Virus record (IMG/VR): IMGVR_UViG_3300050821_009835 | Location: 1-64,000 of that record | Length of the DNA stretch: 64,000 nt | Reading direction: 5' to 3' (one strand) | Shown: positions 10,171 to 30,696 of the stretch, piece after piece | Layout: every line of letters starts with the position of its first letter | Position numbering within the stretch: the stretch's first letter is position 1 | Notes under the pieces: generated by a model | What the model was told of the DNA's origin: nothing | Seen by the model: the letters and a program-made list of their open reading frames with translations, nothing else | Database searches by the model: none | Translations under genes and position numbers: made by a program

Positions 10171-10177
10171 TGGCACA

Positions 10178-10580: not shown

Positions 10581-10625
10581 TTAATCGCATTTCGCCTTTT
10601 ACTCCCAAAGTAGAGGCGATTCACA

Positions 10626-10847: not shown

Positions 10848-10851
10848 TCTC

Positions 10852-12072: not shown

Positions 12073-12075
12073 CTT

Positions 12076-12753
12076 TCATTTACGACCATCCTCGGAAAAT
12101 GTGGAACGGATGGTCAATTCTGTTACTTCCACTGTTTTAGGGAGGGAAAGTATAAATTCAATAGTATCGGCCACAGACTCTGGTTGCATCAGGAGCTCTG
12201 GCTTGTAAATGCGATCCTCTTGTTCATAGAGGGATTTTAAGAGTGGTGTGGCAATTCTTCCCGGAAACAATGATAGAACTCTCACACCTTTTTCATTTGC
12301 TTCGATTCTAAAACTATCGGCAAAGGCTCGTAGAGCGTGCTTCATAGCAGCGTATTGCTCTAACTCGGATCGTTGTACAAAAAGACCAGCAAACGAGTTT
12401 ACAAACACTATTTGACCCTGTGCTGCTGCAAGTAAAGGGAAGAATCTGCGGGTAACGATGTACGGTGCTCGGAAGTTGATATTGTACTGAATGTCCAAGT
12501 CTGCCGGATCATGGCTTTTCAAAAGAACCCCGGCGCTGTGAATGAGAATATCTAATTTGCCCTCTTCAGCCAGGGCTTGAGATATAGTGTCTCTGCCCTC
12601 TTCGGTTCCTATGTCTGCAAGCACCCCAATACATCCGGCCTGAAAATTGTCTTTTCTGCCTACACCGTACACTTTCACACCCTTCTCTACTAACTTTTGA
12701 GTGATAGCTTTCCCCAAACCGCCTGTAGAGCCGATTACTAAGGCTGTTTTCAC
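12076..12753 (-). CDS. Short-chain dehydrogenase/reductase (possible NDP-sugar ketoreductase)
   Basis: GSTGGLG, HSAG, YAAMK catalytic motif. GTG start at 12753 has an AGGAG RBS and overlaps the fcl stop. Confidence 0.85.
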   Translation of the reverse strand: MKTALVIGSTGGLGKAITQKLVEKGVKVYGVGRKDNFQAGCIGVLADIGTEEGRDTISQALAEEGKLDILIHSAGVLLKSHDPADLDIQYNINFRAPYIVTRRFFPLLAAAQGQIVFVNSFAGLFVQRSELEQYAAMKHALRAFADSFRIEANEKGVRVLSLFPGRIATPLLKSLYEQEDRIYKPELLMQPESVADTIEFILSLPKTVEVTELTIRSTFSEDGRK

Positions 12754-13694
12754 ATGTTCTCCTGCTGTTTGATGTACCACGCTATGGTTTTGTCCAGTCC
12801 TTCTGAAAGAGTAGTACGCGCTGTGAAACCGAATTCTTGCAACGCACGCTCGGTGTTCAAGCATCGTTCAGGCTGACCATCAGGCATTGTAGAGTCGAAA
12901 AGAATCTCGCCAGTGTAACCTACTTTTTGCGCGATCATGGTTACAAGATCGCTTATTGCAGTTGTGCAACCCGTGCCAATATTAACGGGTGCACCCCCAT
13001 CGTATTTCTCCGTCGCCATTACAACTGCTTTGGCTGCATCTTCAATATAGAGAAATTCACGAAAAGCGTTACCACTGCCCCAGACACTAACAGGAGATTG
13101 CGCGTTAATAGTGGCTTCATAAAATTTCCGAATCAGAGCGGGCATTACATGAGAACTGCTGGGATTGAAGTTGTCATGAGGACCATAAAGATTAACAGGT
13201 AAGAGGTGTATCACGTTGAACTTGTACTGGTCTCGATAGGCTTGACCCATCACCATCAAAGACTTCTTTGCAATGCCGTAAGGGGCATTAGTTTCTTCAG
13301 GATAGCCATTCCACAAATCGTTCTCGTTGAATGGAACCGGAGTAAATTTTGGATATTCGCAGACCGTTCCGAGTTGCACGAATTTTTCTACCCCTTGTTT
13401 ATGGGCTGCGTGCATCAATAGGATGCCCATTAGGGCATTATCATAAAAGAGATCGGCAGGTCGTTCTTTGTTCAATCCTATGCCACCACAGTGAGCAGCG
13501 CAATGAATTATGATGTCAGGAACGGTCTTTTGAAGTACAGTATCAATCTGCTCTTTGACTCGTAGATCGTATTCGATTGACGTGGGTGCGGATACTTCTC
13601 TACACCCGCGCTGGTGTAATTCTGAAACAATATGCTGTCCGAAAAAACCCGCTCCACCTGTGACGAGGACGCGTTTGCTGGTTAAATCAATCAT
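12750..13694 (-). CDS. fcl: GDP-L-fucose synthase
   Basis: [68 protein letters not shown]. Confidence 0.93.
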
Positions 13695-14665
13695 TGGAGT
13701 GCCACCTTTTCTCGCTTTGCATCGATCAAATCTGAATCCACCATCCTACGCACAAGATCTCGAAACTTAATTTGAGGCTCCCAGCCTAATACTCTTTTCG
13801 CCTTAGAAGAGTCACCCAGAAGAATATCCACTTCGGTTTTTCGATAGTATTTTGGGTCAATTCCAACGTACTCATGCCAGTCCATTCCGAGATAGCCAAA
13901 GGCCTCGTCTAAAAGTTCCCGAACTGTGTGCGTCTCTCCTGTAGCAATGACAAAATCATCGGGAGTATCTTGTTGCAACATAAGCCACATAGCGTTTACA
14001 AACTCTGGGGCGTATCCCCAGTCTCGTTTAGCCTCCAAATTTCCCAGCAGTAACTTTTCTTGCAAACCCAGTTTAATCCTAGATGTTGCCTTAGTGATCT
14101 TACGTGATACAAAAGTCTCCCCTCTTCGTTCAGACTCATGGTTGAATAAGATGCCATTACACGCAAACATCCCCATCTCTCGATAATTGACTGTGGTCCA
14201 AAAAGCAAATTGCTTTGCTATTCCATACGGGCTACGTGGGTAAAATGGGGTATTCTCATTTTGCGGTATCTCCTGAACTTTCCCATAAAGCTCACTAGAT
14301 GAAGCTTGATAGAATTTGGCTCCAGGACTTTGGGCCTTGATCGCTTCAAGAAGCCGGAGAGTTCCCAAACCGTCTACGTCAGCGGTATATTCAGGGATAT
14401 CAAAACTGACACGCACGTGGCTTTGTGCACCCAGATTGTAGACTTCATCCGGCTGGATCTCTCCTATGAGGCGGCTCAGGGCGCTGCCATCTGTCAAGTC
14501 GTTGTGATGAAGATGAAGTTGGTCGAAGATGTGGTCTATTCGCCCGGTATTAAAACTGCTGGAACGACGGATGATACCGTGAATCTCATAGTCCTTCTCT
14601 AATAGAAGTTCCGCAAGGTATGAACCGTCTTGACCCGTGATTCCAGTTATTAATGCTTTTTTCAA
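13691..14665 (-). CDS. gmd: GDP-mannose 4,6-dehydratase
   Basis: [69 protein letters not shown]. Confidence 0.97.
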
Positions 14666-15207
14666 TCTAACACTACCCGAGCAATGCTCATCTCTACCTT
14701 GGCTTGTGGTGACAATCTCAAGATGCCGTTAACGCAGGGACAAACATTCTCTTCACATTTGTGATCCGAGTAAAGATCAGTGTTGATGATGTCATCAACC
14801 AAGATTACACTATGAGTCAGTTTTCTATTGAGTAGATATTCAAGTTCATAATGCCCAGAAAACTTGTGCTTTGCTGAACTGAGTGGGCCGGGGTCATCTG
14901 AACCTAAATGGGCATCCAGCCAGAATAGAATACGTTCATTGGGTAGATTCTTCACTATCTGAGGGAGAAGAATCTCACTGTCCCCTTGGTACAAGTGAAC
15001 GTTGTTCACGCCCAAGAATTTATTTTTGCAGTACTCGTAGCGTTCTGCGTGAAGCTCTATGGAATACACTTCTTTGAAGATATGACGGGCGAACTCTACT
15101 GATCTTCCATCATTGGTTCCAGTCTCAACAAAGGTTTCTAAGCCATAGGTATCGTGGTAGAACTTCATCTGGTTGTGCTTGTAGACTTCAAGTTCTTGCC
15201 AAGACAT
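14662..15207 (-). CDS. SAM-dependent methyltransferase-like protein
   Basis: FVETGT.DG, SIELH, LFWLDAH, ILVDD. Start at ATG 15207 (TAATG coupling). Confidence 0.6.
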
Positions 15208-16397
15208 TATTCCTGGGTTGAAGGTAGGCATTTTATCCTTTCTGGATAAGGGGTAAAATAATCCCCTTGGTAAGTCTCCGCGTATCGTTTGAAGATTTCT
15301 GTTGCATAGTTCCAAGAGAAAATACAGGTAGACTCAGGCTGAGCATCAAGCCAGTCTTGAGGAGATCGCACCTCAATTTGTGTTCCCGGAATAAACTTCC
15401 CGATTTTCGCTGGGGCGTCATCAGCCACGGCGTCAATCAAGGTGTGATCAATACCGCAATAATTCATCATCACTGTTGCTTTCGCCGCCGCCCCAAATCC
15501 CCAGATCCTCTTTCCTTGACTTTTGAAGCGCAAGAGAGTGTTTTTCAGGTCGTAGGCAACTTGGTCGGCATACTGTTGTAGGGTATGTACATTCTCTAGC
15601 CCATATTCAACGAACGGGAATGTAGTGGAAGCGATACCTACAAGGTCTGGATACTCCTTCTTACATGTGACGCGGAGGGAGCCGCCTTGCGATGGAAGTT
15701 GCTCTACGTTTGCAATGTACAGCCCATGACGACTGAAGAGACGATCCAGGGATTTGAAGGAAAAATAATAGCAGTGCTCGTGGTAGATAGTGTCGAACGT
15801 GCCCTTATTCAGCAGGTCGCCAAGGTAAGGAACTTCGATCATGCAAATTCCTTCTGGCTTTAAAATTTCTGCAATCCCAGCCACGAAATCATTGATATCC
15901 GGTACATGAGCTAGAACATTATTGGCGTGGATAACATCAGCTTTGGGTAGAGTGAGTGCTAAGTCGTGAGTGAAGAATTCCGGTATAGTTGGGATGCCTT
16001 TCTTAACAGCAACTTCGGCAGGTCCTAGCGCCGGGTCAACCCCTAGAACAGTAAAGCCGTGATCTTTGTAAAATTGCAGCAAGTAGCCGTCATTGCTGGC
16101 AAGTTCGATCACTAGAGCATCTGTGGGAAGTGTTTTGACAGTTCTTTCGACTAGGACTTTTGCAGAGTCTACTACAGATTTGCAGACGGTAGAGAAGTAC
16201 AGATATTCTACAAACATCTTTTCAGGCAAAACGTAATTTCGGATTTGTCCCAATGCGCAAGATGCACAGTACATGATATCTAGAGGATGCTTCTCGAATG
16301 CTTCGTCCCGGGAGGTGAGAAGTTCATTCGCTAGGGGAGTTTTTCCAAGAGAGAATATCATTTCGGTGTTATCACCGCAGCTGCGACAGTTCATCAT
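15207..16397 (-). CDS. NDP-sugar C-methyltransferase (Zn-binding, TcaB9/EryBIII-like)
   Basis: CRSCG..LGKTPLAN, ELASNDGYLL, HANNVLAHVPD, FDTIYHEH, GFGAAAKA, KIGKFIPGT. Confidence 0.88.
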   Translation of the reverse strand: MMNCRSCGDNTEMIFSLGKTPLANELLTSRDEAFEKHPLDIMYCASCALGQIRNYVLPEKMFVEYLYFSTVCKSVVDSAKVLVERTVKTLPTDALVIELASNDGYLLQFYKDHGFTVLGVDPALGPAEVAVKKGIPTIPEFFTHDLALTLPKADVIHANNVLAHVPDINDFVAGIAEILKPEGICMIEVPYLGDLLNKGTFDTIYHEHCYYFSFKSLDRLFSRHGLYIANVEQLPSQGGSLRVTCKKEYPDLVGIASTTFPFVEYGLENVHTLQQYADQVAYDLKNTLLRFKSQGKRIWGFGAAAKATVMMNYCGIDHTLIDAVADDAPAKIGKFIPGTQIEVRSPQDWLDAQPESTCIFSWNYATEIFKRYAETYQGDYFTPYPERIKCLPSTQE

Positions 16398-17332
16398 ATA
16401 CCTAGCCTCTCAACCATCTTTACATTGTAGTATTCTGGGTTATCCCAGTCCGAGAATTTATCGACATTGGCCGCAAGTTCTTGGACGATCTGTTCAACCC
16501 TTTGCTGGGGATTGAATGCCAGAATAGATTTTGCTTTCTCTATAGAGATTTTGTAATTACGTTTATCTGGATTCGTGGTAGTGTTAAGTTTTACTCCCAT
16601 GAGATTAGCCATGATTTCAGCTATCTGCCCAACTGTGTAATTTTCAGATGCTATGTTGAATGCCCCAGAAATGCCCATATCCGCTTCCACAGCTTTAACG
16701 TATGCTTGCGCGGCGTCAGCAATACCTAGAATGGGCCTCCAGATCTCTGGATTGCTCGCAGTGATCATGCCGTCTCTAACGGCGGACTTGTACATGGCAT
16801 TTATGATGAGGTCCAAACGCATCCTTGGACTGTACCCACAAACCGTGCCTTTACGCAGGGTAATAACAGAGAAATTCTCATCCTGCAAATGTAAAACTGC
16901 CTGTTCCCCTAGCATCTTAGAAATCCCGTAAGGATGTTTACAGATTGGTGGATCTTCCTCTACACATATCCTATCCGTCAGATATTCATAGATAGAACAT
17001 GTGCTGGCATAAACGAATCGTTTGACGTGAGCCTGTTTTGCAATGTATGCTAAGTACGCGGGTGCCGATGTATTGAGAATGAAATTCTTTCCCGGAGAGA
17101 GTTCACAGGTAGGGACACTGGACATTCCAGCTATGAAAACAACTCGTTCATAGGGTTCTAAATCACTTTCTGTTAAATCAAAAACATCTCTGTTGTACAA
17201 CCCGATACCACCAGGCAGATGATTACCAAACCATAAAAGATCCACTACATCTACGCTGTGTCCATGTTCTAATAAGGCGGGCACTAAACGTGATCCCACA
17301 TACCCAGCTCCTCCTGCTACAAGAATTTTCAT
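16394..17332 (-). CDS. NAD-dependent NDP-sugar epimerase/dehydratase
   Basis: ILVAGGAGYVGS, YASTCSIY, PYGISK, RMRLDLIIN. ATG 17332 overlaps the upstream stop. Confidence 0.88.
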   Translation of the reverse strand: MKILVAGGAGYVGSRLVPALLEHGHSVDVVDLLWFGNHLPGGIGLYNRDVFDLTESDLEPYERVVFIAGMSSVPTCELSPGKNFILNTSAPAYLAYIAKQAHVKRFVYASTCSIYEYLTDRICVEEDPPICKHPYGISKMLGEQAVLHLQDENFSVITLRKGTVCGYSPRMRLDLIINAMYKSAVRDGMITASNPEIWRPILGIADAAQAYVKAVEADMGISGAFNIASENYTVGQIAEIMANLMGVKLNTTTNPDKRNYKISIEKAKSILAFNPQQRVEQIVQELAANVDKFSDWDNPEYYNVKMVERLGI

Positions 17333-18129
17333 GCTAGTTTCTCCTGCAGCCATTTGGTCTTCTTTTCATGGTACTCTGCAGATTTTTGATTCCAGTTGGA
17401 ACCTGCACGGTAGTGTAACACAATGGGATTTCCAGAAATCGAGTACCATTCATAGTCTATACCTGTGAAATCTGCTTCATCAACTGTGGGTGTGGCCCCA
17501 ATATGGAGTTGCCTTAGTCCGGGATGAGCTTGCAGATATTTGTAAGTCTGCCCTCCAACATCCACCGGGATGCCCTTAGCTGTACCACAATACCAATCCA
17601 TAGTTTCGGGGCTAGGCAATAGAGACGGGTTAGTTAGTATCATGCCACTGTGCATGTTTATATCAGAAATTCTGTCGCCCAGTCTATACTGCATGGGATG
17701 AAATCCAATATCGTATCCTTGCAGAAAATCAGAGAGTTTGATCGGCGCCATTAAAAACATGTCAGATTCCAGAAAACAAATAGGTGTCTTTTCCCAGCAT
17801 ATATGGGTTTTCCACGCCCAACAGAGGGGGTAGGCGCAGGCTATGTTTGCGTTGCTGTAAGTGCCGTTTGGCAAAAACAAAGAAGGGAAGACACTCTCTT
17901 GAACTTGGCATGGGTCTTCTATTGCAGAGGTTCTTACGATATCAATAGCTTGAATCCCGATTTTAGAGCAGACAGTTTTGATCTTCTCGTAATTGTTCTT
18001 GTCAATATCAAAGACAGCGTTGTTGAAGACAACAAATTCAAAAGGCTCTTGAAGATGCTTCTGAAAGGACTGAAATTGCAGCCCAATGAAATCGGGCCGC
18101 CTGTGAGCAACTGTAAAGAGCTTAATCAT
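17329..18129 (-). CDS. Putative GT-A-fold glycosyltransferase
   Basis: HRRPDFIGLQ..FVVFNNA, FLESDMF (ExD variant of DxD); sits in the glycan gene run. Confidence 0.45.
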   Translation of the reverse strand: MIKLFTVAHRRPDFIGLQFQSFQKHLQEPFEFVVFNNAVFDIDKNNYEKIKTVCSKIGIQAIDIVRTSAIEDPCQVQESVFPSLFLPNGTYSNANIACAYPLCWAWKTHICWEKTPICFLESDMFLMAPIKLSDFLQGYDIGFHPMQYRLGDRISDINMHSGMILTNPSLLPSPETMDWYCGTAKGIPVDVGGQTYKYLQAHPGLRQLHIGATPTVDEADFTGIDYEWYSISGNPIVLHYRAGSNWNQKSAEYHEKKTKWLQEKLA

Positions 18130-18185
18130 TAGTGTGGGAAATTCCTTCGCTATCAATACTCAATTATATAAACGGAAGGTGATCA

Positions 18186-18890
18186 ATGGGAATAAGAATC
18201 TACAATCCGCCACTCACAGGAACTGCTTATAACTGGCGTCAATCAGCCACGGGAAACGAAGTTCCTGGCGAGTCATTGGCCGTGGCTTACGGCACGGATG
18301 TAGTGAAAGGAAATTTAATGATCGTTGTAGTGGGCGGTGGAGCTGCTTCCGCAGGTTCATTTCCCATCGCCTCAATTTCTGATACTCTCAGCAGTTCTTG
18401 GAATCTCATTCCAAATTGCCCAATTGAGAGCAATCCAGATGTAACTACGTCCAATTTGGCCTGGATGTGGTGGGCGATTGCCCCGTCATCGGGAGCAAAT
18501 ACAGTGACTGTTACCATGAATCAGTCGACTTACTACGAGATGAGTATCGCAGAGTGGTACGTCTATGGAGCTGTTCCCACACTAGATGCTTTTGGTGTTG
18601 CTGCGCACACTACTGGAACAACGTTAAGCGTTTCTTCCTCAAGTTGTTTGAATCCTTCTGATTTACTTGTTGCTTTCGTAGACGTTAATGCTGGGGATAG
18701 CACTTTTGCTCTTTCGGGCTATACGGAGAGGGAGGCAGATACCGAAGGTTCGACGTCTTTATGGGATGCATCTTCTTCGGTTACAGGTACGCAGACTGCT
18801 AACTTCACTGGTTTAGCCTCGGGAGATGCAGAAGCCATTATTGCATGCTTTTCAGGCATACCTCTCCCACCTAGTATCATCATCTGTTAG
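18186..18890 (+). CDS. Ser/Thr/Ala-rich beta-sandwich-repeat protein (tail-associated-like), antisense to the operon
   Basis: Two related units (GNLMIVVVG / SDLLVAFVD); GAAGGT RBS; stop overlaps the convergent gene by 4 nt. Confidence 0.6.
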   Translation: MGIRIYNPPLTGTAYNWRQSATGNEVPGESLAVAYGTDVVKGNLMIVVVGGGAASAGSFPIASISDTLSSSWNLIPNCPIESNPDVTTSNLAWMWWAIAPSSGANTVTVTMNQSTYYEMSIAEWYVYGAVPTLDAFGVAAHTTGTTLSVSSSSCLNPSDLLVAFVDVNAGDSTFALSGYTEREADTEGSTSLWDASSSVTGTQTANFTGLASGDAEAIIACFSGIPLPPSIIIC

Positions 18891-19546
18891 TACCCGCAAT
18901 TGATAACAGAATCTTCGGTGTAGAGGTCTTTCCAATTGGCAGGATCAACACCAAGTTGTTCTCCTAATTCTTTAAGGACAAATATGGTATTGCCAATATG
19001 GCAGGCCAATTCATAACCCTTTAGTTTCGCCAAGTCCACCATAGAGGCAAACGAAGCCGCCGCATCCCTTCCTGCTGGTTTTCCTAGTTCTGGAATTTTC
19101 CGCATTTCTGGCCCGTATGAGGTGTTAACCTCTATGACTACAACTCTTGGGCGATAATTTTCCAGAGTTTGCCAGATGAGATAGTCATCGTTGTCCACAT
19201 CTATTGACAGCAGGTCTAAGTCTTTAGGGAGTGGGGTTTTATTGAGGATTTCTTCAATATTGCTGGGACGTACAAATTCTTGCATTAGAACTGCCCGATT
19301 TATTTCCCGAAAATTGTTTTGGAGTTGTTTAAATCGCTCAGCTTCTGCTTCTATGAGAACGGCTGACCATCCTTGGTTCATGATGAGGTCATAGGTGTTG
19401 GAAATTGTTTTGCCATCCCAAGCTCCGAACTCGCAACACCATTTATTTGCAGCGCCTATCTTTTTGAAGATGGCGTCAATGACGCCATCTTCACCGTTTT
19501 GACTTGTAACATTATGCCTATGTTCCTTCAACCAAAGACTGGACAT
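18887..19546 (-). CDS. FkbM-like SAM methyltransferase
   Basis: SQNGEDGVI..CEFGAWDG..SNT, DLLSIDVDNDD, RPRVVVIE. TAATG-coupled start at 19546. Confidence 0.75.
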   Translation of the reverse strand: MSSLWLKEHRHNVTSQNGEDGVIDAIFKKIGAANKWCCEFGAWDGKTISNTYDLIMNQGWSAVLIEAEAERFKQLQNNFREINRAVLMQEFVRPSNIEEILNKTPLPKDLDLLSIDVDNDDYLIWQTLENYRPRVVVIEVNTSYGPEMRKIPELGKPAGRDAAASFASMVDLAKLKGYELACHIGNTIFVLKELGEQLGVDPANWKDLYTEDSVINCGY

Positions 19547-19932
19547 TAGGCAACGCCATAGCAACCACTGTATTCGATGACGTAACCATCAGCTACAGTA
19601 GGAGAGTTAGAATAATCCTGGCAACGTGCAACTCCAGCACCGTCAGTTGCATCAACAGTTGCTGTCCACGCCACGCCCGTTTCCACTGTTTCTCTTCCTG
19701 CAAATGTGTAACCCCCGCCTACAGGGAATACAGCATCAATAGGAAGACTAAAAATTGGACCTTGTCCTGTTCCCACCGTTGTGATAGTGAGTGTAACTTG
19801 GAAGAAAACTACAGGTCCTATTTGACAATAAGATGCTACAGCAGACGTATCTGTGAACGTGCCTTCTTGAGCTGTTATTGTTGGAGTATAATCCGTCCAA
19901 ATGCTAAATCCGGGTACTAACAATGCACTCAT
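19546..19932 (-). CDS. Small phage tail-fibre-tip-like beta domain
   Basis: WTDYTPTIT..G......Y.QIG.VVFF..T....FSLP pattern recalled from fibre C-termini; AAGGAG RBS. Confidence 0.55.
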   Translation of the reverse strand: MSALLVPGFSIWTDYTPTITAQEGTFTDTSAVASYCQIGPVVFFQVTLTITTVGTGQGPIFSLPIDAVFPVGGGYTFAGRETVETGVAWTATVDATDGAGVARCQDYSNSPTVADGYVIEYSGCYGVA

Positions 19933-19957
19933 TTTCTTTCTCCTTTGGTGTTCTTGT

Positions 19958-19963
19958 AGTATA
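19958..19963 (-). promoter_or_regulatory. Internal -10-like element (TATACT) ahead of the 19932 gene
   Basis: TATACT on the minus strand in the only clear intergenic gap here, followed by an AAGGAG RBS. Confidence 0.35.
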
Positions 19964-19970
19964 GTTTAAA

Positions 19971-20903
19971 CTAATTCTCTAGTTCTCGTACAGCAGCTGC
20001 TATCCCATCAATCTTGTTTAGATACGTGTGTTTTGCTGCTATTTCATCCATGAGGCTGTGGAGTTCCTCTACCTTCATATCTTGAAGTCGTTCTTTGGCG
20101 TCGTAGAATAGTTGGTATGTATCCGGGTTGTAGATTAAACGTCCACCGAATAGATCGTTAGTATACTTTGAATGTGTTATCCCAAACTGGCCATAACTGA
20201 TGTTCTTGAACAACCGACAGGGAACATAACCTCTTTCTATTTGATCAAGTCTTTGCAAGGCCGGAGCCATGTAAGATTCTTTGATGAGACGTACTCCTTC
20301 TTCTGGACTGACAGGCGGCTTATTTACGCCGTATCCGCCGTATCCTTCAAAGCCAATACCATTCTCAGCAGCAGCGCGACGGAAATTGGAAATTGCTCCT
20401 TCGTTGCTGCTGTCTATTGTACCAATATAATTTATGAGAGTACTGTTCGAGTTGAAGACTTGCTTAGGTTTATTCATCGCAATTTCATGAGGCAACAAAT
20501 CTGTTCCCCATCGAAATGCCAGCGAACGATGCCCTTTATCAAAATAAATTTCTGGTCCTACCTCCACTACAGAATCAGCATAAGAGTTTAAGCTGCAGTG
20601 TACTCCAAAACTAAGGGAGTTCAGTCCTTCAAAATGCGATCGGCAAGAATCATCTAGATTGTGGACGATGTAAAAGCCATCTTGTCTTTGAGGTATACCA
20701 TGATAGGCGCAATTCATAGTCAGGAAACAAGACCCTGCAAAATCAATCTGAGAAATATCATCCCCGTTCTCTAGCCAGTAAACTTCTTTCCCTAAGAATT
20801 GAAGAGTCTTCAAAAAGGCTTCGTGTATGTGACCATACGTGTTGTAGGGGCGCTTTGCGCCCCATATAATCCATTTGCAGGTATCAATGTTGAATTCGTT
20901 CAT
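19971..20903 (-). CDS. Putative glycosyltransferase (GT-B-like)
   Basis: TYGHIHEAF, YIGT, YVPCRLFKNISYG; operon context. Confidence 0.45.
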   Translation of the reverse strand: MNEFNIDTCKWIIWGAKRPYNTYGHIHEAFLKTLQFLGKEVYWLENGDDISQIDFAGSCFLTMNCAYHGIPQRQDGFYIVHNLDDSCRSHFEGLNSLSFGVHCSLNSYADSVVEVGPEIYFDKGHRSLAFRWGTDLLPHEIAMNKPKQVFNSNSTLINYIGTIDSSNEGAISNFRRAAAENGIGFEGYGGYGVNKPPVSPEEGVRLIKESYMAPALQRLDQIERGYVPCRLFKNISYGQFGITHSKYTNDLFGGRLIYNPDTYQLFYDAKERLQDMKVEELHSLMDEIAAKHTYLNKIDGIAAAVRELEN

Positions 20904-21694
20904 GATTTTTCCTTAATGGCCTGATTCCCAAACTTGTCCAACCACCATCTAGAGGCATTGAATGCATTCAGGCATAATATGTCCTTTCGTTCAATCACCA
21001 AAATGGTTTTTTCGTTGGCATACCAGCCTTGGACCATGAAGTCCGGGGCTTTCGTCATCTCCATATTTAAGCGATGCAAAAGCACACTAGCAGCGGTTTG
21101 GTCTTGTCGATGGCCAAGTACTCTAGGATCATCGCTAGCTTCTCCGTCTATGTTATTCTTCGGTCCTATGAATGCCCCTTTCTTTTCCAATTCTTGCCAT
21201 TGATGGAAAAATTTTTGGGCGATATCGTGTTTAAAACACAATCCAAAAGCGTTGGTCGAACACTGTGGAACATGAAATGATTCTTCTCTTGTCAGACCAA
21301 GAATCGGGAGAGCTGAATCGCATGTCCATTCTCCGTTGTTGTTGGACATATTATCTGAAAACCAATAACCGCGCTGCTCAATATACTCCCATAGAGGAAT
21401 TAATTGACGTATGGGTATGATAGATGAATCAGCCCAAATAACAGTATCGCAACCCCGTTTATGCGCTTCATCTATGGCGTAGAGTTTAAAAGCATAAGGG
21501 CTGTCTTTCGGTTGGGGGCTTCCTGGTGGAAGATTATAGCCAGTCCATTGCAGAGTTTGTTCCCCCCACATGTGAAAAAAGAAATCCAGACGATGTTGCA
21601 TAGCATCAAAATCCGCCCCGTCATCGTCACAACCGGGATTATGCTTACGCCCACCTCCCACTGAAACTATGATCCGACTCACAATTTCACCCAT
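20900..21694 (-). CDS. Putative nucleotide-diphospho-sugar transferase
   Basis: YAFKLYAI..A...VIWADSS, HRQDQTAAS. Start at ATG 21694 or GTG 21682. Confidence 0.55.
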   Translation of the reverse strand: MGEIVSRIIVSVGGGRKHNPGCDDDGADFDAMQHRLDFFFHMWGEQTLQWTGYNLPPGSPQPKDSPYAFKLYAIDEAHKRGCDTVIWADSSIIPIRQLIPLWEYIEQRGYWFSDNMSNNNGEWTCDSALPILGLTREESFHVPQCSTNAFGLCFKHDIAQKFFHQWQELEKKGAFIGPKNNIDGEASDDPRVLGHRQDQTAASVLLHRLNMEMTKAPDFMVQGWYANEKTILVIERKDILCLNAFNASRWWLDKFGNQAIKEKS

Positions 21695-22455
21695 CTTTCT
21701 GGAATCAAATCTTTTGTGTCTATGTTCGCCGCAAACCACCGTTTTGGGGCGATTACAATACGATTTGTTTGTTGATCCCCTAACCAAGCTCCCCACCAGC
21801 TGAAACTAGAATTAGCCAGTATCGCATGCTGGCAGCCACTCATTAGATAAAGATCCTCGTGGGGGGCATTACTGTTGTGGTCAACCACAATGCAATCCGT
21901 AGGGAAATTTTCCCGGCACCAATGCGGTTCGTCTGAAAAGACAAAAAACTTAACGCCTTCTCGCTGTCCTCGAATGACGTTCATGGCCTTGGTGTAGTAG
22001 TCTATTGTCGGCATACCATGAAATGCATTCGTGCTCCCACTTGTGTAATCTCCACGTCTAACGTGTAGAAATGTGCTGTTTTCTGTTCTCAAGATTGCGT
22101 CCATAATTTGATTCGTTTGGCCACTCGCAGGATTTCGCAGTGTCACTTCTTTACGAACAATATCAGTGTTGAAGTATTTCTCAGTCTGCCAATAACCGAT
22201 GAAGCGACTATCATGAGGAGCTGTATACACACCGCTATCATAACAAAACGAAGGTTCCCGATATTCTGACAGACCTGTTCCATTTGCAAACAAAACATTT
22301 ACGTTGAATGCATCAAGTGAATAAGCACGAAGATGCCTGTCACCTAAATTGTATTTTTCAAAGAAAACATCTTCATTTCTAGCCAAAGACACTGAACGTC
22401 CAAAAGCATACTGGAAGAGTTGATTGCCCACGCCGCCGCAAAGTTGAACGATCAT
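21679..22455 (-). CDS. Alpha-1,2-fucosyltransferase (GT11)
   Basis: GGVGNQLFQYA, GYWQTEKYF, HVRRGDY, FFVFSDEP, DLYLMSGCQHAILANSSFSWWGAWL. Confidence 0.95.
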   Translation of the reverse strand: MIVQLCGGVGNQLFQYAFGRSVSLARNEDVFFEKYNLGDRHLRAYSLDAFNVNVLFANGTGLSEYREPSFCYDSGVYTAPHDSRFIGYWQTEKYFNTDIVRKEVTLRNPASGQTNQIMDAILRTENSTFLHVRRGDYTSGSTNAFHGMPTIDYYTKAMNVIRGQREGVKFFVFSDEPHWCRENFPTDCIVVDHNSNAPHEDLYLMSGCQHAILANSSFSWWGAWLGDQQTNRIVIAPKRWFAANIDTKDLIPERWVKL

Positions 22456-23840
22456 CTAGATTCCTTGTCAAGTGCCAGCAACTTGGGTACTATGCTTACA
22501 CGGCCCGCTCTCTTCCACTTTTCCGCGTAACGCCCAGCGGTCTGATACTCACTCTGTGGGTAACAAAAAGAGGGGTCTAAGATTTTAGCTGGCGGGTGGT
22601 CGTAAAGATACCTCTGAAGGTGACTTTCATCGTGCCAAATAGCAAGAATCCCGTTGGCATCATCTGTATTAACTGCCTCTTTGATTGTTTCCGCCATCTG
22701 TAAAAACGCTGAACTTGCGCCACCATTGAATCCACCACAGAAATAAGTTTCCCCAGTTGGGCAGCAAGCTGTAGACCGAGGGTTGGTTTCGGGAGTTCCA
22801 GGAACGCCCACGTAGCCCGGATGTTCTGTAGCTGTGATGCCACCCGAAAAAATCTCATCTGCCGTCACCGGGGCAACAAACAGCATGTCTGCATCCGAAT
22901 AGAACAACTGATCATATTTGGAAAGAATCTCGCGTGCGCCCCAAATGGCATGATAGCGCATAAGTGTTGCTCGCGGGAATCCAAGATGCACATGCTCTAC
23001 GACGATGCAGTCGGTAAACCCCGTTGGATCATCGGTAAAAATAATCACGTCATGGGGTACAAAAAATTGCTTTGCTGAATCAATAAGCTGCCTGGCGTTT
23101 CTGCGGTAAGTTTCACCCGTCGCAATAATGATGAGAGCTGTTTGTTTTTTAGTGTCGGGAACTGTATCATAACAGGCGTGCATCATTTCTGAGGTGCAGG
23201 GGTGAATGGCGATATTAGAAGTTTGAATCCCCGGCTTGAATAAATCCCCTATCTTTAGAAATTTTGCTCCTATGCTACGATACCTATCATCGTATTTATG
23301 AGCAATGCCACTTTTGTGTAGGACTTCGCCTACCCAATGATCTTCTAAAGTGTTTGTTATCCTTCCATTAGCAATCAGATCGGCAGACCTTCTACTCACC
23401 CAGTATCCCAGTCCGGTTGCATAAGGATATTTGCCCAGGTAACTAATGGCTCCGATATAATCGTGTGCTTCGAAACCGCTACCCATTAAACGATCTACCC
23501 AGATGTATGTATCATCATCAGTCATGAAGATATGGTCATAGCCCTGTTTCACTGCCCAAGCACAAATGGCTTTAGTTTTATAGGGTAAACTTTTGTAATC
23601 ATCGCAGCAATCCAAAACTACTTCATCGGATAATAAGGCACGATTGGCCCCTTGTCCATAGAAAAATCTAACATCAGTATTGAGGTATGCTGTAAAGTCT
23701 TTTACCCAAGTATCACGGCATGCCTTAATCTGCTCGTCAACATTGTTAGAGCGATGCTTTTCTTGATTGGTCCAATCCCAGCCTTTTCCTGTCATGGGAA
23801 CATAGCGATGACAAGCTTTTATAGCAACCAGAACTTTCAT
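22452..23840 (-). CDS. Bifunctional glycosyltransferase: N-terminal GT31/Fringe-like domain plus C-terminal GT6 (ABO-type) domain
   Basis: N-terminal domain: D.Y.SLPYKT..I.AWA..GYDHIFMTDDDTY. C-terminal domain: IIFTD, FPRATLMRY, YSDAD, YFCGGFNGG, WHDESHLQRY. ATG 23840 overlaps the upstream stop. Confidence 0.85.
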   Translation of the reverse strand: MKVLVAIKACHRYVPMTGKGWDWTNQEKHRSNNVDEQIKACRDTWVKDFTAYLNTDVRFFYGQGANRALLSDEVVLDCCDDYKSLPYKTKAICAWAVKQGYDHIFMTDDDTYIWVDRLMGSGFEAHDYIGAISYLGKYPYATGLGYWVSRRSADLIANGRITNTLEDHWVGEVLHKSGIAHKYDDRYRSIGAKFLKIGDLFKPGIQTSNIAIHPCTSEMMHACYDTVPDTKKQTALIIIATGETYRRNARQLIDSAKQFFVPHDVIIFTDDPTGFTDCIVVEHVHLGFPRATLMRYHAIWGAREILSKYDQLFYSDADMLFVAPVTADEIFSGGITATEHPGYVGVPGTPETNPRSTACCPTGETYFCGGFNGGASSAFLQMAETIKEAVNTDDANGILAIWHDESHLQRYLYDHPPAKILDPSFCYPQSEYQTAGRYAEKWKRAGRVSIVPKLLALDKESR

Positions 23841-24541
23841 GATGGGAGATTCCTCTGCTCGTACGGCTGTTTCCCATTTATAGCCGGACGATTGGGAGTG
23901 CCTTTTGGGACCCGCCATATTTTTGTGGCTGGAGTTCTAGACCATGTGTTGTAATCTAGCCCCAGTTCCACAGTTGGCGGGAATTCGTACAAATATCGAT
24001 TGAGATGACTTTCATCATGCCAAGTGGCAATGAAATCGTTGGCATTGTCTATATCAATCCGCTTACTGATGATCTCTGCCATGGACAGAAATGCTTGGGT
24101 TTTTCCTCCTTGGAAACCACCGATGTACATCTTGCGAATATCCTTTTTGCTAAGGTAAGCGGTAGAACGAGGGTCTTCTTCCGGGGTGCAGTATTGGCCG
24201 CCGCTCATAATGAATGAGGCGTGAATACAAGCAGTAATGCCGTCGGAGAGAATTTCTGTTCCTATTGGAGCAGTCATGTTCATACAGATGTCCATGTAGA
24301 AGATGTATTCATACTGGGACAGCCATTCTCGTTGATTGAGCATGGTATGATAGCGCATCAATGTAACATGAGGCCAGCCTACGTGAGGAATTTGCACTTG
24401 TTTGGTGACCCCAAATCGCTGGGGACTATCTGTAAATAGCAAGATGTCGGAAGGAAGGAATCGTGCCGAAGTGATGGCAGGTTGAATAAATTTATGGTAG
24501 TCTCGTCCAGTGCAAATGAAGATTAAAGCAGTTTTATTCAT
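23837..24541 (-). CDS. GT6 (ABO blood-group-type alpha-1,3-Gal/GalNAc transferase)
   Basis: LIFICTG.DY, LLFTD, WPHVTLMRY, YMDIC, MYIGGFQGG, WHDESHLNRY. Confidence 0.88.
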   Translation of the reverse strand: MNKTALIFICTGRDYHKFIQPAITSARFLPSDILLFTDSPQRFGVTKQVQIPHVGWPHVTLMRYHTMLNQREWLSQYEYIFYMDICMNMTAPIGTEILSDGITACIHASFIMSGGQYCTPEEDPRSTAYLSKKDIRKMYIGGFQGGKTQAFLSMAEIISKRIDIDNANDFIATWHDESHLNRYLYEFPPTVELGLDYNTWSRTPATKIWRVPKGTPNRPAINGKQPYEQRNLPS

Positions 24542-25185
24542 TCCAGCAATCCTCTCACCGTTTCCCATGTCACAGGTCTATACTCGAGAGGTCCTAAAGT
24601 CTTCTTGCAAGCATTAGCGGGGTGCACAGCCGCGACCACCAAGGTTGGATCTTTGATATCCAATTTTGCAGAAGGTGGCAATTTGAGCTGGAGTTTATAG
24701 TCTGAACCCGCTGCCGAAGGTTCAAATTTATGATTTTCCCAGAGTTTTTTACGAAAGGCAATAGAGGCTAACCAGTTCACGCGGGGCGGCGAAGTATAAT
24801 GCCAGGCTTGATGAAAGTCTTCTTTCACAAAATACAACGTACTGGTACCTGTTAACATCAGTGCAGGGCTATCTATCATTGGTTGAATCTGGTGCGAAAT
24901 TCTATGAGTGGGATACACATCATCATCATCATGGACTATACAATATTCTCCTGAAGCATACTCGCAACAGATATTCATTTTCTGCCCATGATTTTTCTGA
25001 GGGAGATCTCGGAAATACTTTATTCTGGGATCATCGGGAAGCAGGTCTTTGATAGGATCTGGGCCATCATCTAACACTATGAGTTCAAGATTGGGGTAGT
25101 CTTGTTTTTGAAAACACTTGATGGCACGAGGGATGAACGCTCGTCTGTTGAAGGTTGGCATTAAAGCCGAAACTAGAGGCATCAT
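24538..25185 (-). CDS. Glycosyltransferase family 2
   Basis: VSALMPTFNR, ELIVLDDG, VHDDDD. Confidence 0.85.
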   Translation of the reverse strand: MMPLVSALMPTFNRRAFIPRAIKCFQKQDYPNLELIVLDDGPDPIKDLLPDDPRIKYFRDLPQKNHGQKMNICCEYASGEYCIVHDDDDVYPTHRISHQIQPMIDSPALMLTGTSTLYFVKEDFHQAWHYTSPPRVNWLASIAFRKKLWENHKFEPSAAGSDYKLQLKLPPSAKLDIKDPTLVVAAVHPANACKKTLGPLEYRPVTWETVRGLLE

Positions 25186-30640: not shown

Positions 30641-30696
30641 GTTTTCTCTCCTAAACTATTGGCAGATCTTCTCTATCTATTAAACAGGAAGTGATT

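What the first reader, a model, noticed from the sequence alone, without database searches (positions are those of the whole stretch)
12750..24541. Phage-encoded histo-blood-group-A-like pathway (Gmd + Fcl + GT11 + two GT6 domains)
Seen: gmd and fcl, an alpha-1,2-fucosyltransferase, and two GT6 domains with intact WHDESHL. Established: Gmd/Fcl make GDP-L-fucose, GT11 makes H antigen (Fuc-a1,2-Gal), and GT6 adds a1,3-GalNAc (A) or Gal (B). Human GTA reads YYLGG and GTB reads YYMGA at the donor-selecting positions. Both phage domains have Gly at the 268-equivalent (YIGG, FCGG), which is A-type. Inference: the phage can build an A-like or Forssman-like epitope, perhaps to shield its virion or to bind lectin-like receptors. 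GT6 is known from a few bacteria and a cyanophage, but a tandem pair with GT11 and the donor pathway in one phage gene run is notable.
Basis: partly seen in the sequence, partly recalled or inferred. Interest (0 to 1): 0.8.

Follow-up and report, generated by a model that had tools for sequence, protein, structure and literature searches.

The report
Phage sugar-coat genes, blood-group-A-like
A giant soil bacteriophage carries a tightly packed run of about twenty sugar-building genes that could plausibly make a blood-group-A-like sugar cap, but the same gene combination turns out to be common in phages and has sat in a published cyanophage genome since 2005, so it is a good example of a known kind rather than a first.

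Summary
On the minus strand lie Fcl (12750-13694), Gmd (13691-14665), a GT11 fucosyltransferase (21679-22455) and two GT6 domains with intact WHDESHL. The GT6 domains sit in two adjacent genes, not one. The second gene (22452-23840, 462 aa) fuses a GT31-like domain to GT6. They belong to a larger 15.5-kb operon-like island (11107-26569) with about ten glycosyltransferase domains, four methyltransferase-like genes and a sugar 3-C-methyl branch.

The A-like reading is well supported by sequence for the fused GT6. It has DAD, His/Gly/Thr/Tyr acceptor residues, Cys-Gly-Gly at 266-268, Ala at the fucose-accommodating position and the C-terminal Lys. It is weaker for the stand-alone GT6, which has D-I-C, H-A-S, Met for Tyr and a different tail. 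GT31-like, GT11 and GT6 form a coherent Gal-beta, Fuc-alpha1,2, GalNAc-alpha1,3 chain.

The novelty claim fails. GT6 occurs in 72 GenBank phage records and 328 IMG/VR stretches, and 69 of the 80 best viral GT6 loci carry GT11 within 10 kb. P-SSM2 and ACG-2014f already show Gmd, Fcl-like, GT11 and GT6 in one run. The glycan's target, host surface or virion fibres, is unresolved.

Verdict: new member of a known kind; interest about 0.35.

The parts
11107..12072 (-). GT2-family glycosyltransferase (GT2a), last gene of the island
   Evidence: Pfam Glycos_transf_2 at 122 bits. No TM segment. Homologues in 27 of 80 viral GT6 loci.
12076..12864 (-). Classical short-chain dehydrogenase/reductase; start uncertain (gene calls give 225-234 aa)
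   Evidence: Pfam adh_short at 104 bits. NCBIfam PRK08219 at 155 bits, below its cut-off. Gene calls.
12750..13694 (-). GDP-L-fucose synthase-like (Fcl/GMER)
   Evidence: NCBIfam GDPFucSynFcl at E 1e-88, full length but below the cut-off. Best PDB matches are GDP-L-fucose synthases at E 1e-64, with catalytic Cys, Tyr, Lys and His kept.
13691..14665 (-). GDP-mannose 4,6-dehydratase (Gmd)
   Evidence: TIGR01472 at 505.7 bits against a cut-off of 415. Pfam GDP_Man_Dehyd at 450 bits.
14662..15231 (-). Small protein with a SAM-methyltransferase-like glycine motif (read by eye); no family match
   Evidence: No Pfam, NCBIfam or PHROG hit. Sequence shown. Homologues in 14 of 80 viral GT6 loci.
15207..16397 (-). 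Nucleotide-sugar 3-C-methyltransferase
   Evidence: Pfam Methyltransf_13, 23 and 14. PDB sugar 3-C-methyltransferases 5t64, 4rv9 and TcaB9 at E 1e-55 to 1e-60, full length.
16394..17353 (-). Extended SDR nucleotide-sugar oxidoreductase or epimerase; probable partner of the C-methyltransferase
   Evidence: Pfam Epimerase at 92 bits. Best PDB match is 6vo6, a putative sugar-nucleotide epimerase/dehydratase, at E 4e-28; GalE-type matches are much weaker.
17329..18129 (-). Conserved unknown (266 aa); recurs in related viral glycan islands
   Evidence: No family hit. Homologues in 19 of 80 viral GT6 loci, usually next to the GT-B gene or Gmd.
18186..18890 (+). Oppositely oriented 234-aa Ser/Thr/Ala/Gly-rich ORF inside the island; unknown function
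   Evidence: Called as a gene in two assemblies. No family hit. Translation.
18887..19546 (-). FkbM-like methyltransferase (weak)
   Evidence: Pfam Methyltransf_21 at E 9.5e-4, below the cut-off. The syntenic gene in related phage L005 has the same weak hit.
19546..19932 (-). 128-aa Ser/Thr/Gly-rich protein; unknown, not conserved in other loci
19971..20903 (-). Phage-type GT-B fold glycosyltransferase
   Evidence: ESM Atlas: nearest clusters are viral; structure TM 0.64-0.69 to GT1/GT4 families; T4 glucosyltransferase family among the feature hits. Homologues in 22 of 80 loci.
20900..21694 (-). Phage-type GT-A fold nucleotide-sugar transferase (264 aa)
   Evidence: ESM Atlas: TM 0.60-0.86 to viral and bacterial clusters, including GT8, GT34 and Nucleotid_trans-like ones. 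A gene of similar size (292 aa, no family hit, homology not shown) follows GT11 in related phage L005.
21679..22455 (-). GT11 alpha-1,2-fucosyltransferase-family enzyme
   Evidence: Pfam PF01531 at 109 bits against a cut-off of 23.9. HVRRGDY and the other family motifs are invariant across phage homologues.
23157..23840 (-). GT31-like (beta-1,3-Gal/GlcNAc/GalNAc-transferase family) N-terminal domain of the fusion protein
   Evidence: Pfam Galactosyl_T at 35 bits against a cut-off of 23. Atlas nearest clusters are viral Galactosyl_T/Fringe. In the AF2 model this domain is confident, and the best non-GT6 PDB fold match is human B3GNT2 at E 6e-10. The sequence contains a DDD motif.
22452..23156 (-). 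GT6-2: C-terminal GT6 domain of the fusion protein, with the canonical phage-type signature
   Evidence: Pfam PF03414 at 70 bits. BoGT6a at E 1e-28 and GTA at E 1e-20. Carries DAD, HPG, Thr, Tyr, C-G-G, WHDESH, Ala at A7 and the Lys.
23837..24568 (-). GT6-1: stand-alone divergent GT6 paralogue
   Evidence: Pfam PF03414 at 76 bits. BoGT6a at E 2e-27. Its signature (D-I-C, HAS, I-G-G, different C-tail) is absent from 149 nearest family representatives. The ortholog in L009 is 74% identical and has D-V-C.
24538..25185 (-). GT2-family glycosyltransferase (GT2b)
   Evidence: Pfam Glycos_transf_2 at 75 bits.
25182..25784 (-). TylF-like sugar O-methyltransferase
   Evidence: Pfam TylF at 65 bits and Methyltransf_24 at 49 bits.
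25781..26569 (-). Weak GT2-like protein (GT2c), first gene of the island; abuts the upstream fibre-like gene
   Evidence: Pfam Glycos_transf_2 at E 0.004, below the cut-off. PHROG 1574 at E 4e-7.
26570..33022 (-). Four co-oriented probable virion fibre-like proteins (513, 827, 447 and 329 aa); candidate acceptors, not shown to be part of the pathway
   Evidence: Ser+Thr is 18-26%. The 513-, 827- and 447-aa proteins share sequence modules; the 329-aa protein has no BLASTP match to them. Weak PHROG 'virion structural protein' hits at E 3e-8 to 3e-11. No homologues in other loci or in GenBank phages.

Best explanation
This is a phage-borne glycan-biosynthesis island in a soil jumbo phage. It is one co-oriented, translationally coupled gene run, 11107-26569.

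Shown by sequence evidence:
- Gmd and an Fcl-like enzyme are present.
- There is a GT31-like domain fused to a GT6, a GT11, a second divergent GT6, three GT2-type enzymes, one viral GT-A and one viral GT-B.
- There is a sugar 3-C-methyltransferase with its own SDR partner, plus up to three further methyltransferase-like genes.

Inferred mechanism:
1. Host GDP-mannose is converted by Gmd to GDP-4-keto-6-deoxymannose.
2. This intermediate is split between Fcl, giving GDP-L-fucose, and the C-methyltransferase plus reductase, giving a GDP-3-C-methyl-6-deoxyhexose.
3. [quoted passage not shown]
4. GT11 adds Fuc-alpha1,2.
5. The fused GT6-2 caps the same Gal with alpha1,3-GalNAc from host UDP-GalNAc. 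This gives an A-like trisaccharide at the end of a larger, partly methylated oligosaccharide built by the other soluble transferases in the infected cytoplasm.
6. GT6-1 most likely adds a second alpha1,3-linked sugar to a different acceptor.

The carrier of the glycan is not determined. My split is about 45% a host lipid-linked or surface glycoconjugate (the classical 'phage LPS genes' idea), about 35% the phage's own virion fibre proteins, and 20% something else.

The island is a member of a widespread viral module (GT6 + GT11, with or without GT31, Gmd and Fcl) first deposited with cyanophage P-SSM2.
For: - Gene identities.
- Residue-level match of GT6-2 to GTA and BoGT6a donor and acceptor determinants. 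Their roles are taken from PMC3516806.
- A DXD-type minimal GT6 (PaGT6) was shown experimentally to be a metal-dependent GalNAc transferase on H antigen (PMC3516806).
- GT31-like assignment.
- Domain fusions linking the three steps: GT31-GT6 here and in 7 other viral loci; GT6-GT11-GT2 in P0017; GT31-GT11 clusters in bacteria and giant viruses.
- Four-base gene overlaps along the run.
- Synteny GT6 / GT31-GT6 / GT11 in a related 155-kb phage contig.
- Co-occurrence of GT11 in 69 of 80 viral GT6 loci, and of strict Gmd in 30.
- Phage origin: IMG/VR UViG of 265 kb; clamp loader, PNK, RNA ligase and virion-protein PHROGs; helicase 56% identical to jumbo phage Tunturi_5.
- GC of the island equals that of its flanks.
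Against: - No enzyme was assayed. Specificity rules come from GTA, GTB and BoGT6a and may not transfer to a clade only about 30-40% identical.
- The GT31 family also holds GlcNAc and GalNAc transferases, so the acceptor sugar is not fixed.
- No UDP-GalNAc 4-epimerase was identified in the island. The second SDR is closest to a GDP-sugar enzyme, so the donor supply depends on an unknown host.
- Fcl scores below NCBIfam's equivalog cut-off.
- GT6-1 lacks the second Asp of DXD and two acceptor residues.
- With about ten transferases, the A-like cap could be further substituted or methylated, so that no A epitope is exposed.
Confidence: 0.6

Rival explanations
1. Same enzymes, but the acceptor is the phage's own virion. 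The island glycosylates the Ser/Thr-rich fibre-like proteins encoded directly upstream, as mycobacteriophages glycosylate capsid and tail proteins and giant viruses glycosylate capsids or fibrils with virus-encoded machinery.
For: - All island proteins are soluble. There is no Wzx, Wzy, ligase or polyprenyl-phosphate transferase.
- The first island gene starts one base after the stop of a 513-aa protein with 26% Ser+Thr. Four fibre-like genes lie upstream on the same strand, with weak virion-protein PHROG hits.
- The GT-A, GT-B and GT31-like families found here are overwhelmingly viral in the Atlas.
- Phage virion glycosylation is an established phenomenon (papers listed), as is giant-virus self-glycosylation (PMC9614988, listed).
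Against: - In related phages the island is not consistently next to Ser/Thr-rich proteins.
- The fibre-like proteins have no homologues elsewhere, so no co-evolution signal exists.
- Ser/Thr richness is common in tail fibres anyway.
- Every characterised bacterial GT6 or GT11 works on lipid- or LOS-linked glycans (PMC4202792).
Confidence: 0.3
2. The GT6 domains are not A-type. One or both add another alpha1,3-linked sugar (Gal, giving a B-like or alpha-Gal epitope, or Glc), or act on non-fucosylated acceptors (Forssman-like). In that case no blood-group-A-like epitope is made.
For: - GT6-1 has D-I-C, H-A-S, Met at the Tyr153/264 position and a tail that does not align at the A7 and Lys positions.
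- The 266-equivalents (Ile, Cys) differ from both GTA (Leu) and GTB (Met).
- Both score below the cut-off of NCBIfam NF041524, whose name is 'family 6 glucosyltransferase'.
- Cyanophage GT6s carry Q-G-C at 266-268, showing that the position varies in phages.
Against: - GT6-2 keeps Gly at the 268-equivalent and a small residue at the 266-equivalent, like GalNAc-specific BoGT6a (A-G-G). It also keeps His, Gly, Thr, Tyr, Trp, Glu and Ala at A7, the set that accommodates 2'-fucose (PMC3516806).
- GT11 is adjacent and overlapping, and is linked to GT6 in 86% of viral loci.
Confidence: 0.25
3. GT6-1 is a catalytically impaired paralogue (pseudo-enzyme, or a sugar-binding or scaffold subunit) rather than a second transferase.
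For: - The second Asp of the metal-binding DXD is Cys. None of 149 nearest family representatives shows D-x-C.
- It sits on a long branch in the GT6 tree.
Against: - The catalytic Glu and the whole WHDESHL are intact.
- The ortholog in a related phage is 74% identical and keeps D-V-C and the unusual C-tail, indicating purifying selection.
- In BoGT6a the second motif position tolerates substitution with minor kinetic effect (PMC3516806).
Confidence: 0.15
4. The region is a bacterial O-antigen or EPS locus on a mis-classified or chimeric contig, not phage DNA.
For: The enzymes are the same families as in the E. coli O86 O-antigen pathway (WbnI GT6, WbwK GT11; PMC4202792). The window also holds a transposase.
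Against: - The same 41-kb to 340-kb contigs were assembled independently in several samples.
- IMG/VR lists it as a viral genome.
- Both flanks carry phage genes.
- There is no wzx or wzy and there are no membrane proteins.
- GC is uniform.
- The nearest GT-A, GT-B and GT31 families are viral.
Confidence: 0.03

Closest known systems
'LPS gene' cluster of Prochlorococcus phage P-SSM2 (PSSM2_257-271) and the equivalent runs in Synechococcus phages ACG-2014f and S-SCSM1
   Same: One phage gene run holds Gmd, Fcl-like epimerases, GT2s, GT11 and a minimal DXD-type GT6 (PMC9602691). All enzymes are soluble, and function is uncharacterised. They were hypothesised to remodel the host surface (PMC1079782).
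   Different: The window is from a soil jumbo phage related to an Acidobacteria phage, not a T4-like cyanophage. It has two GT6 paralogues, a GT31-GT6 fusion, C-G-G or I-G-G rather than Q-G-C at positions 266-268, and a 3-C-methyl-sugar branch. GT25 was not found among the proteins scanned.
E. coli O86 O-antigen pathway (WbnI GT6 + WbwK GT11), which makes a blood-group-B-like O unit
   Same: The enzymatic logic is the same: a beta-Gal, then alpha1,2-Fuc by a GT11, then an alpha1,3 cap by a GT6 (PMC4202792). That the O86 cluster also carries gmd and fcl is my own knowledge, not checked here.
   Different: The O86 unit is built on undecaprenyl-PP and needs Wzx, Wzy and a ligase encoded with it. 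None of these is in the phage island. According to PMC3516806, bacterial GT6s apart from PaGT6 have N-x-N in place of D-x-D; WbnI itself was not examined here. Here the motifs are D-A-D and D-I-C.
BoGT6a (Bacteroides ovatus) and PaGT6 (Parachlamydia): characterised prokaryotic blood-group-A synthases
   Same: BoGT6a is the best structural and sequence match, and all substrate-contact residues are shared with GT6-2. PaGT6 is the minimal DXD, metal-dependent GalNAc transferase on H antigen, in the same clade as phage GT6 (PMC3516806).
   Different: Identity to BoGT6a is only about 30% in the structure-based alignments. BoGT6a is N-x-N, metal-independent and has a C-terminal membrane-binding domain. 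The window's enzymes are untested.
Virus-encoded virion glycosylation (chlorovirus PBCV-1 and mimivirus; mycobacteriophage capsid and tail glycosylation)
   Same: A large virus carries its own nucleotide-sugar enzymes together with soluble transferases and methyltransferases (reviews listed; that chloroviruses encode Gmd and a GDP-L-fucose synthase is my own knowledge, not checked here). Phage GT genes next to structural genes have been taken to suggest capsid glycosylation.
   Different: There is no evidence here that virion proteins are glycosylated. Enzyme families overlap only in part.

Membership tests
CAZy GT6 (PF03414): GT6-2 domain | Significant match to the family profile above the curated threshold | tested here: met
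   PF03414 at 69.8 bits against a cut-off of 25. A profile of phage GT6s hits BoGT6a at E 3.5e-66 and GTA at 1.7e-53.
CAZy GT6 (PF03414): GT6-2 domain | GT-A fold like BoGT6a, GTA and GTB | tested here: met
   Foldseek top hits are BoGT6a at E 3.5e-13 and GTA/GTB at about 1e-9. The C-domain of the model has low pLDDT, so this is supportive only.
CAZy GT6 (PF03414): GT6-2 domain | DXD (or NXN) nucleotide-sugar motif and catalytic Glu within W-H-D-E | tested here: met
   D-A-D aligns to GTA D-V-D and BoGT6a N-A-N. WHDESH is intact.
CAZy GT6 (PF03414): GT6-1 | Significant match to the family profile above the curated threshold | tested here: met
   PF03414 at 76.1 bits against a cut-off of 25. 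BoGT6a at E 2e-27.
CAZy GT6 (PF03414): GT6-1 | DXD (or NXN) motif | tested here: not met
   The motif is D-I-C. The ortholog in L009 has D-V-C. 144 of 149 nearest representatives have D-x-D, 3 have N-x-N and none has D-x-C. The catalytic Glu is present.
Blood-group-A-synthase-type specificity (UDP-GalNAc donor, Fuc-alpha1,2-Gal acceptor) | Gly at the GTA-268 equivalent and a residue at 266 that leaves room for the N-acetyl group | tested here: met
   GT6-2 has C-G-G and GT6-1 has I-G-G, against GTA L-G-G and BoGT6a A-G-G. This is a sequence-level test only.
Blood-group-A-synthase-type specificity (UDP-GalNAc donor, Fuc-alpha1,2-Gal acceptor) | Acceptor residues His122, Gly124, Thr134, Tyr153, Trp189, Glu192 and a small residue at Ile228 (BoGT6a numbering), as listed in PMC3516806 | tested here: inconclusive
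   GT6-2 keeps all of them (H, G, T, Y, W, E; Ala at A7; Lys231 equivalent kept). GT6-1 has Ser for Gly124 and Met for Tyr153, and its tail does not align reliably.
Blood-group-A-synthase-type specificity (UDP-GalNAc donor, Fuc-alpha1,2-Gal acceptor) | Measured transfer of GalNAc to H-type acceptors | not testable with these tools
   This needs recombinant enzyme assays.
CAZy GT11 alpha-1,2-fucosyltransferase (PF01531) | Profile match above threshold and the HxRRxDY GDP-fucose motif | tested here: met
   109 bits against a cut-off of 23.9. HVRRGDY and three further motifs are invariant across four phage GT11s. No solved structure is found by sequence.
GDP-mannose 4,6-dehydratase (TIGR01472 equivalog) | Score above the curated equivalog cut-off | tested here: met
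   505.7 bits against a cut-off of 415.
GDP-L-fucose synthase (NF047922 equivalog) | Score above the curated equivalog cut-off | tested here: not met
   297.6 bits against a cut-off of 500. It is still by far the best family, and the match is full length.
GDP-L-fucose synthase (NF047922 equivalog) | Catalytic Ser/Thr-Tyr-Lys triad plus the Cys and His epimerisation pair | tested here: met
   In the alignment to 7ll6, G-T-V-C aligns with G-S-S-C, Y-x3-K is kept and G-P-H-D-N-F is kept. The residue roles come from my own knowledge of E. coli GMER.
CAZy GT31 (PF01762 Galactosyl_T): N-domain of the fusion | Profile match, and GT-A fold closest to GT31 members | tested here: met
   35 bits against a cut-off of 23, but only about 54 profile positions are matched. 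Atlas nearest clusters are Galactosyl_T/Fringe. The best non-GT6 PDB fold match is B3GNT2 at E 6e-10, TM about 0.5. The donor sugar is not assignable.
Wzx/Wzy-dependent O-antigen gene cluster (e.g. E. coli O86) | Flippase, polymerase and an initiating polyprenyl-phosphate transferase encoded with the transferases | tested here: not met
   No protein in 9289-33022 has more than two hydrophobic segments, and none matches those families.
Phage virion-glycosylation system | Glycosylated virion proteins | not testable with these tools
   Only adjacency to fibre-like genes is seen.

The most novel reading that the evidence does not exclude
A soil jumbo phage uses this island to glycosylate its own Ser/Thr-rich fibre proteins in the host cytoplasm with a methylated, C-branched oligosaccharide capped by a blood-group-A-like trisaccharide. 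That would be a bacteriophage counterpart of giant-virus fibril glycosylation. The D-x-C paralogue GT6-1 would be a new GT6 specificity or metal-use type adding a second, different alpha1,3 cap.
Probability: 0.2. Interest if true: 0.7.

Novelty: new member of a known kind. Interest (0 to 1): 0.35.

Why it matters
Phage 'LPS gene' clusters have been known since 2005, yet no product or target of a GT6/GT11/Gmd module has been determined in the literature I could search. This window gives a compact, intact and apparently environmentally expressed example in which the three steps of an A-type cap are physically linked, one of them by gene fusion.

That makes it a convenient set of enzymes for finally testing what these widespread viral modules make. 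If the A-like product is confirmed, environmental phages would be a large reservoir of histo-blood-group-type glycan synthesis, which bears on ideas about the origin and horizontal spread of GT6. The D-x-C GT6 paralogue is a small enzymological curiosity.

None of this is surprising to a specialist in phage auxiliary genes, which is why the score is moderate.

Tried and rejected
- Megablast of the 13-kb region against GenBank phages found no match.
- tblastn of the 447-aa virion-like protein against phages found no match.
- PHROGs gave nothing for nine of the ten unknown island ORFs.
- phmmer of the GT31-like domain against the PDB gave only a chance hit. The assignment had to come from Pfam, the Atlas and Foldseek.
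- The GT11 has no solved structure detectable by sequence.
- The sigma-70 promoter and terminator scan of 9000-28900 found fewer sites than shuffles, so it gives no information on transcription units.
- Tunturi_5, the nearest isolated phage, is only a distant relative (helicase 56% aa identity; GC 58% against about 46%). No GT6 match to it appeared among the 40 of 72 records listed, and its published annotation mentions only a few glycosyl- and galactosyltransferases, so it gives no host or function transfer.
- I first aligned the GT6 C-termini from memory of the GTA tail (S-I-V-P-K against T-A-V-P-K). The profile alignment to BoGT6a showed this was wrong, and I replaced it with P-K-L-L-A-L-D-K against P-I-I-L-I-R-D-K.
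- I considered the second SDR (16394-17353) as a UDP-Glc(NAc) 4-epimerase that would supply UDP-GalNAc. Its GalE match covers only the Rossmann half, and its best structure match is a different sugar-nucleotide enzyme, so I rejected this.
- The metatranscriptome run holds 100%-identical fragments across the island. The tool warns that DNA carry-over cannot be excluded, so I use this only as a hint.
- Adjacency of Ser/Thr-rich proteins to the island in related phages was checked and is not consistent.

Full report
**What is there**

The minus strand between 33022 and 11107 is one uninterrupted run of co-oriented genes.

- Pfam and NCBIfam identify Gmd at 13691-14665 (TIGR01472, 505.7 bits, above its equivalog cut-off).
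- An Fcl-like SDR lies at 12750-13694.
- A GT11 lies at 21679-22455 (PF01531, 109 bits).
- There are two GT6 domains (PF03414, 76 and 70 bits).
- Fcl falls below NCBIfam's strict cut-off (297.6 against 500). It is nevertheless full length, all its best PDB matches are GDP-L-fucose synthases (E 1e-64), and the Cys, Tyr-x3-Lys and His positions are conserved.
- The GT11 has the family's GNQxFQYA, HVRRGDY, FSDE and NSSFSWWGAWL motifs, invariant across four phage homologues.
- Both GT6 domains contain WHDESHL. Their best solved relative is the Bacteroides ovatus A-antigen synthase BoGT6a (E 1e-27 to 1e-28), followed by human GTA and GTB.

**Corrections to the anatomy**

- The two GT6 domains are in two adjacent genes.
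- GT6-1 (23837-24568) is a stand-alone minimal enzyme.
- The next gene does not start at 23918. It starts at Met27 (23840), where its ATG overlaps the TGA of GT6-1. Independent gene calls give the same 462-aa product.
- The N-terminal 228 residues of that product are a GT31-like domain. The evidence is Pfam Galactosyl_T above threshold, nearest Atlas clusters that are viral Galactosyl_T/Fringe families, and an AlphaFold model whose confident N-domain matches human B3GNT2 best outside GT6 (E 6e-10), while the C-domain matches BoGT6a (E 3.5e-13).
- Most genes along the run overlap by four bases, as expected for a translationally coupled operon.

**The island is much larger than the five genes**

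From 26569 down to 11107 it contains:

- a weak GT2-like protein, a TylF-type O-methyltransferase and a GT2;
- GT6-1, GT31-GT6-2 and GT11;
- a viral GT-A-fold transferase and a viral GT-B-fold transferase;
- two small unknowns and an FkbM-like methyltransferase;
- one oppositely oriented Ser/Thr-rich ORF and a conserved unknown;
- an extended SDR, and a nucleotide-sugar 3-C-methyltransferase (PDB 5t64, 4rv9 and TcaB9, E 1e-55 to 1e-60);
- a small methyltransferase-like protein, then Gmd, Fcl, a classical SDR and another GT2.

Gmd's 4-keto product therefore probably feeds two branches: fucose, and a 3-C-methyl-6-deoxyhexose. No protein in the region looks like a flippase, polymerase, ligase or polyprenyl-phosphate transferase.

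**Is it a phage?**

Yes.

- The contig is in IMG/VR as a 265-kb viral genome. It also appears as contigs of 41 kb and up to 340 kb in other assemblies of soil metagenomes.
- The window carries a clamp loader, a PNK plus RNA ligase pair, virion-protein PHROG hits, a peptide deformylase and a NUDIX protein.
- Its SNF2 helicase is 56% identical to that of the 309-kb Acidobacteria jumbo phage Tunturi_5 (PMC11924767).
- GC in the island (0.44-0.46) matches the flanks.

**Residue-level test of the A-type reading**

I used the HMMER alignments to BoGT6a and GTA, a profile alignment that extends through the C-terminus and an hmmalign of 149 family representatives. These gave the positions that PMC3516806 defines as substrate contacts.

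| Position | GT6-2 | GT6-1 |
|---|---|---|
| DXD motif | D-A-D | D-I-C |
| His122 / Gly124 region | H-P-G | H-A-S |
| Thr134 | Thr | Thr |
| Tyr153 | Tyr | Met |
| GTA 266-268 equivalents | C-G-G | I-G-G |
| W-H-D-E | intact | intact |
| 'A7' (Ala in GTA, Ile in BoGT6a, Trp in alpha3GT, where it excludes fucose) | Ala | does not align |
| C-terminal phosphate-binding Lys | kept | does not align |

GT6-2's set is also the modal signature of the family's viral and environmental members. The minimal DXD-type clade includes PaGT6, shown experimentally to be a metal-dependent GalNAc transferase on H antigen. For GT6-2 the A-type inference is as good as sequence can make it.

GT6-1's signature is absent from all 149 nearest representatives. 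Its ortholog in a related phage is 74% identical and keeps D-V-C and the odd tail. In a GT6 tree the GT6-1 clade (four phages) and the GT6-2 clade both fall inside one well-supported 22-member clade of environmental phage enzymes. I read GT6-1 as a selected, neofunctionalised duplicate whose acceptor, and perhaps donor, cannot be read off from Gly268.

**A coherent three-step chain**

An A or H determinant needs a beta-linked Gal. The GT31-like domain fused to GT6-2 is the obvious candidate to make it.

- GT31-GT6 fusions recur in 8 viral loci.
- A GT6-GT11-GT2 fusion exists (P0017).
- GT31-GT11 fusions form whole clusters in Verrucomicrobiota and in giant viruses.
- In a related 155-kb phage contig the order GT6, GT31-GT6, GT11 is conserved.

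These Rosetta-stone and synteny links support the chain GT31, then GT11, then GT6. The sugar added by the GT31-like domain, and UDP-GalNAc supply by the unknown host, remain inferences.

**Novelty**

The searches show otherwise.

- In GenBank phages, tblastn finds GT6 in 72 records, GT11 in 103 and Gmd in 86. Most are cyanomyoviruses, plus two >630-kb huge phages.
- Synechococcus phage ACG-2014f has Gmd, an Fcl homologue (37% identity, E 1e-59), GT11 and GT6 within 5.5 kb.
- P-SSM2 itself has Gmd, two epimerases, GT2s, GT1, GT11, GT6, an epimerase and GT25 in one run, annotated as such. These were discussed in 2005 as 'LPS genes' (PMC1079782).
- S-SCSM1's Gmd, Fcl and alpha-1,2-fucosyltransferase are described in PMC9602691.
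- In IMG/VR, 328 stretches encode a GT6. Of the best 80 loci (flanks of 10 kb, the window's own contig included), 69 have GT11, 30 have a strict Gmd (all of them with GT11), 17 have Gmd, Fcl and GT11, and 20 have a GT31-like domain. Only 4 have two GT6 genes.
- At 50% clustering the family has 1,992 clusters at E<=1e-3.
- What I did not find in the searchable literature is any paper treating the phage module as a blood-group-type pathway, or determining its product.

**Where does the glycan go?**

This is unresolved.

- For a host-surface target: all characterised GT6/GT11 systems act on lipid- or LOS-linked glycans, and this is the standing hypothesis for cyanophage clusters.
- For a virion target: every enzyme is soluble and no export machinery is encoded. 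The island also begins one base after a 513-aa protein with 26% Ser+Thr. That protein shares modules with two of the three fibre-like proteins upstream of it, and two of the four have weak 'virion structural protein' PHROG hits.
- In related phages the island is not consistently next to such proteins, and the fibre-like proteins have no homologues.
- A soil metatranscriptome contains identical fragments across the island. This hints at expression but does not prove it.

**Verdict**

This is a real, intact and rather complete glycan island. Its core could make a GalNAc-alpha1,3(Fuc-alpha1,2)Gal-beta cap. The claim of an unusual combination is not supported.

It is a new member, in a soil jumbo phage, of a widespread and long-deposited kind. 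It has three modest variants: a GT6 duplicate with D-x-C, a GT31-GT6 fusion, and a 3-C-methyl-sugar branch.

Noticed in passing
window 46518-49562 (+): The 1014-aa SNF2-type helicase appears to be interrupted by an intein. Residues about 378-796 match a Vibrio phage 'hedgehog/hint domain protein' and intein-bearing phage proteins. The Tunturi_5 helicase aligns in two pieces around that segment.
   Followed up: partly
window 50088-51206 (+): A full-length transposase (PHROG 506, E 4e-123) sits inside the phage genome.
   Followed up: no
window 36754-37761 and 38376-39491 (+): A polynucleotide kinase/phosphatase and a T4 Rnl1-like RNA ligase lie close together, the classic phage tRNA-repair pair. 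No tRNA genes occur in the window.
   Followed up: no
window 15207-17353 (-): A sugar 3-C-methyltransferase (E 1e-60 to KijD1, TylC3 and TcaB9) is coupled by a four-base overlap to an SDR and lies just upstream of Gmd. This suggests a GDP-linked 3-C-methyl-6-deoxyhexose branch. From memory it resembles the proposed GDP-virenose route of Coxiella; that comparison was not checked. Homologues occur in 9 of 80 viral GT6 loci.
   Followed up: partly
window 26570-32040 (-): Three Ser/Thr-rich proteins (513, 827 and 447 aa) share repeated modules, up to 76% identity over 59 residues. Two of them share a C-terminal domain. They have no homologues in GenBank phages or in the 79 other viral loci.
   Followed up: partly
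window 226-5115 (+): A 1629-aa ORF has no Pfam or PHROG match at all.
   Followed up: no
window 18186-18890 (+): This is the only gene on the opposite strand inside the island. It encodes a 234-aa Ser/Thr/Ala/Gly-rich protein with no family match and is called as a gene in two assemblies.
   Followed up: no
P0017, P0040, P0047: Environmental GT6 domains occur fused to GT11 + GT2 (718 aa), to a GT29 sialyltransferase-family domain (470 aa), and to methyltransferase + GT2 (about 770 aa). GT6 is a frequent module of multidomain transferases.
   Followed up: no
L005 6690-8528: In the related 155-kb phage, a 612-aa protein with an ice-binding-like (PF11999) domain lies about 750 bp upstream of the GT6/GT11 island, on the opposite strand with an Endonuclease_7 gene between them.
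   Followed up: no
window 35315-35914 (+): A phage-type peptide deformylase (PHROG 2890, E 1e-32), an auxiliary gene better known from cyanophages.
   Followed up: no
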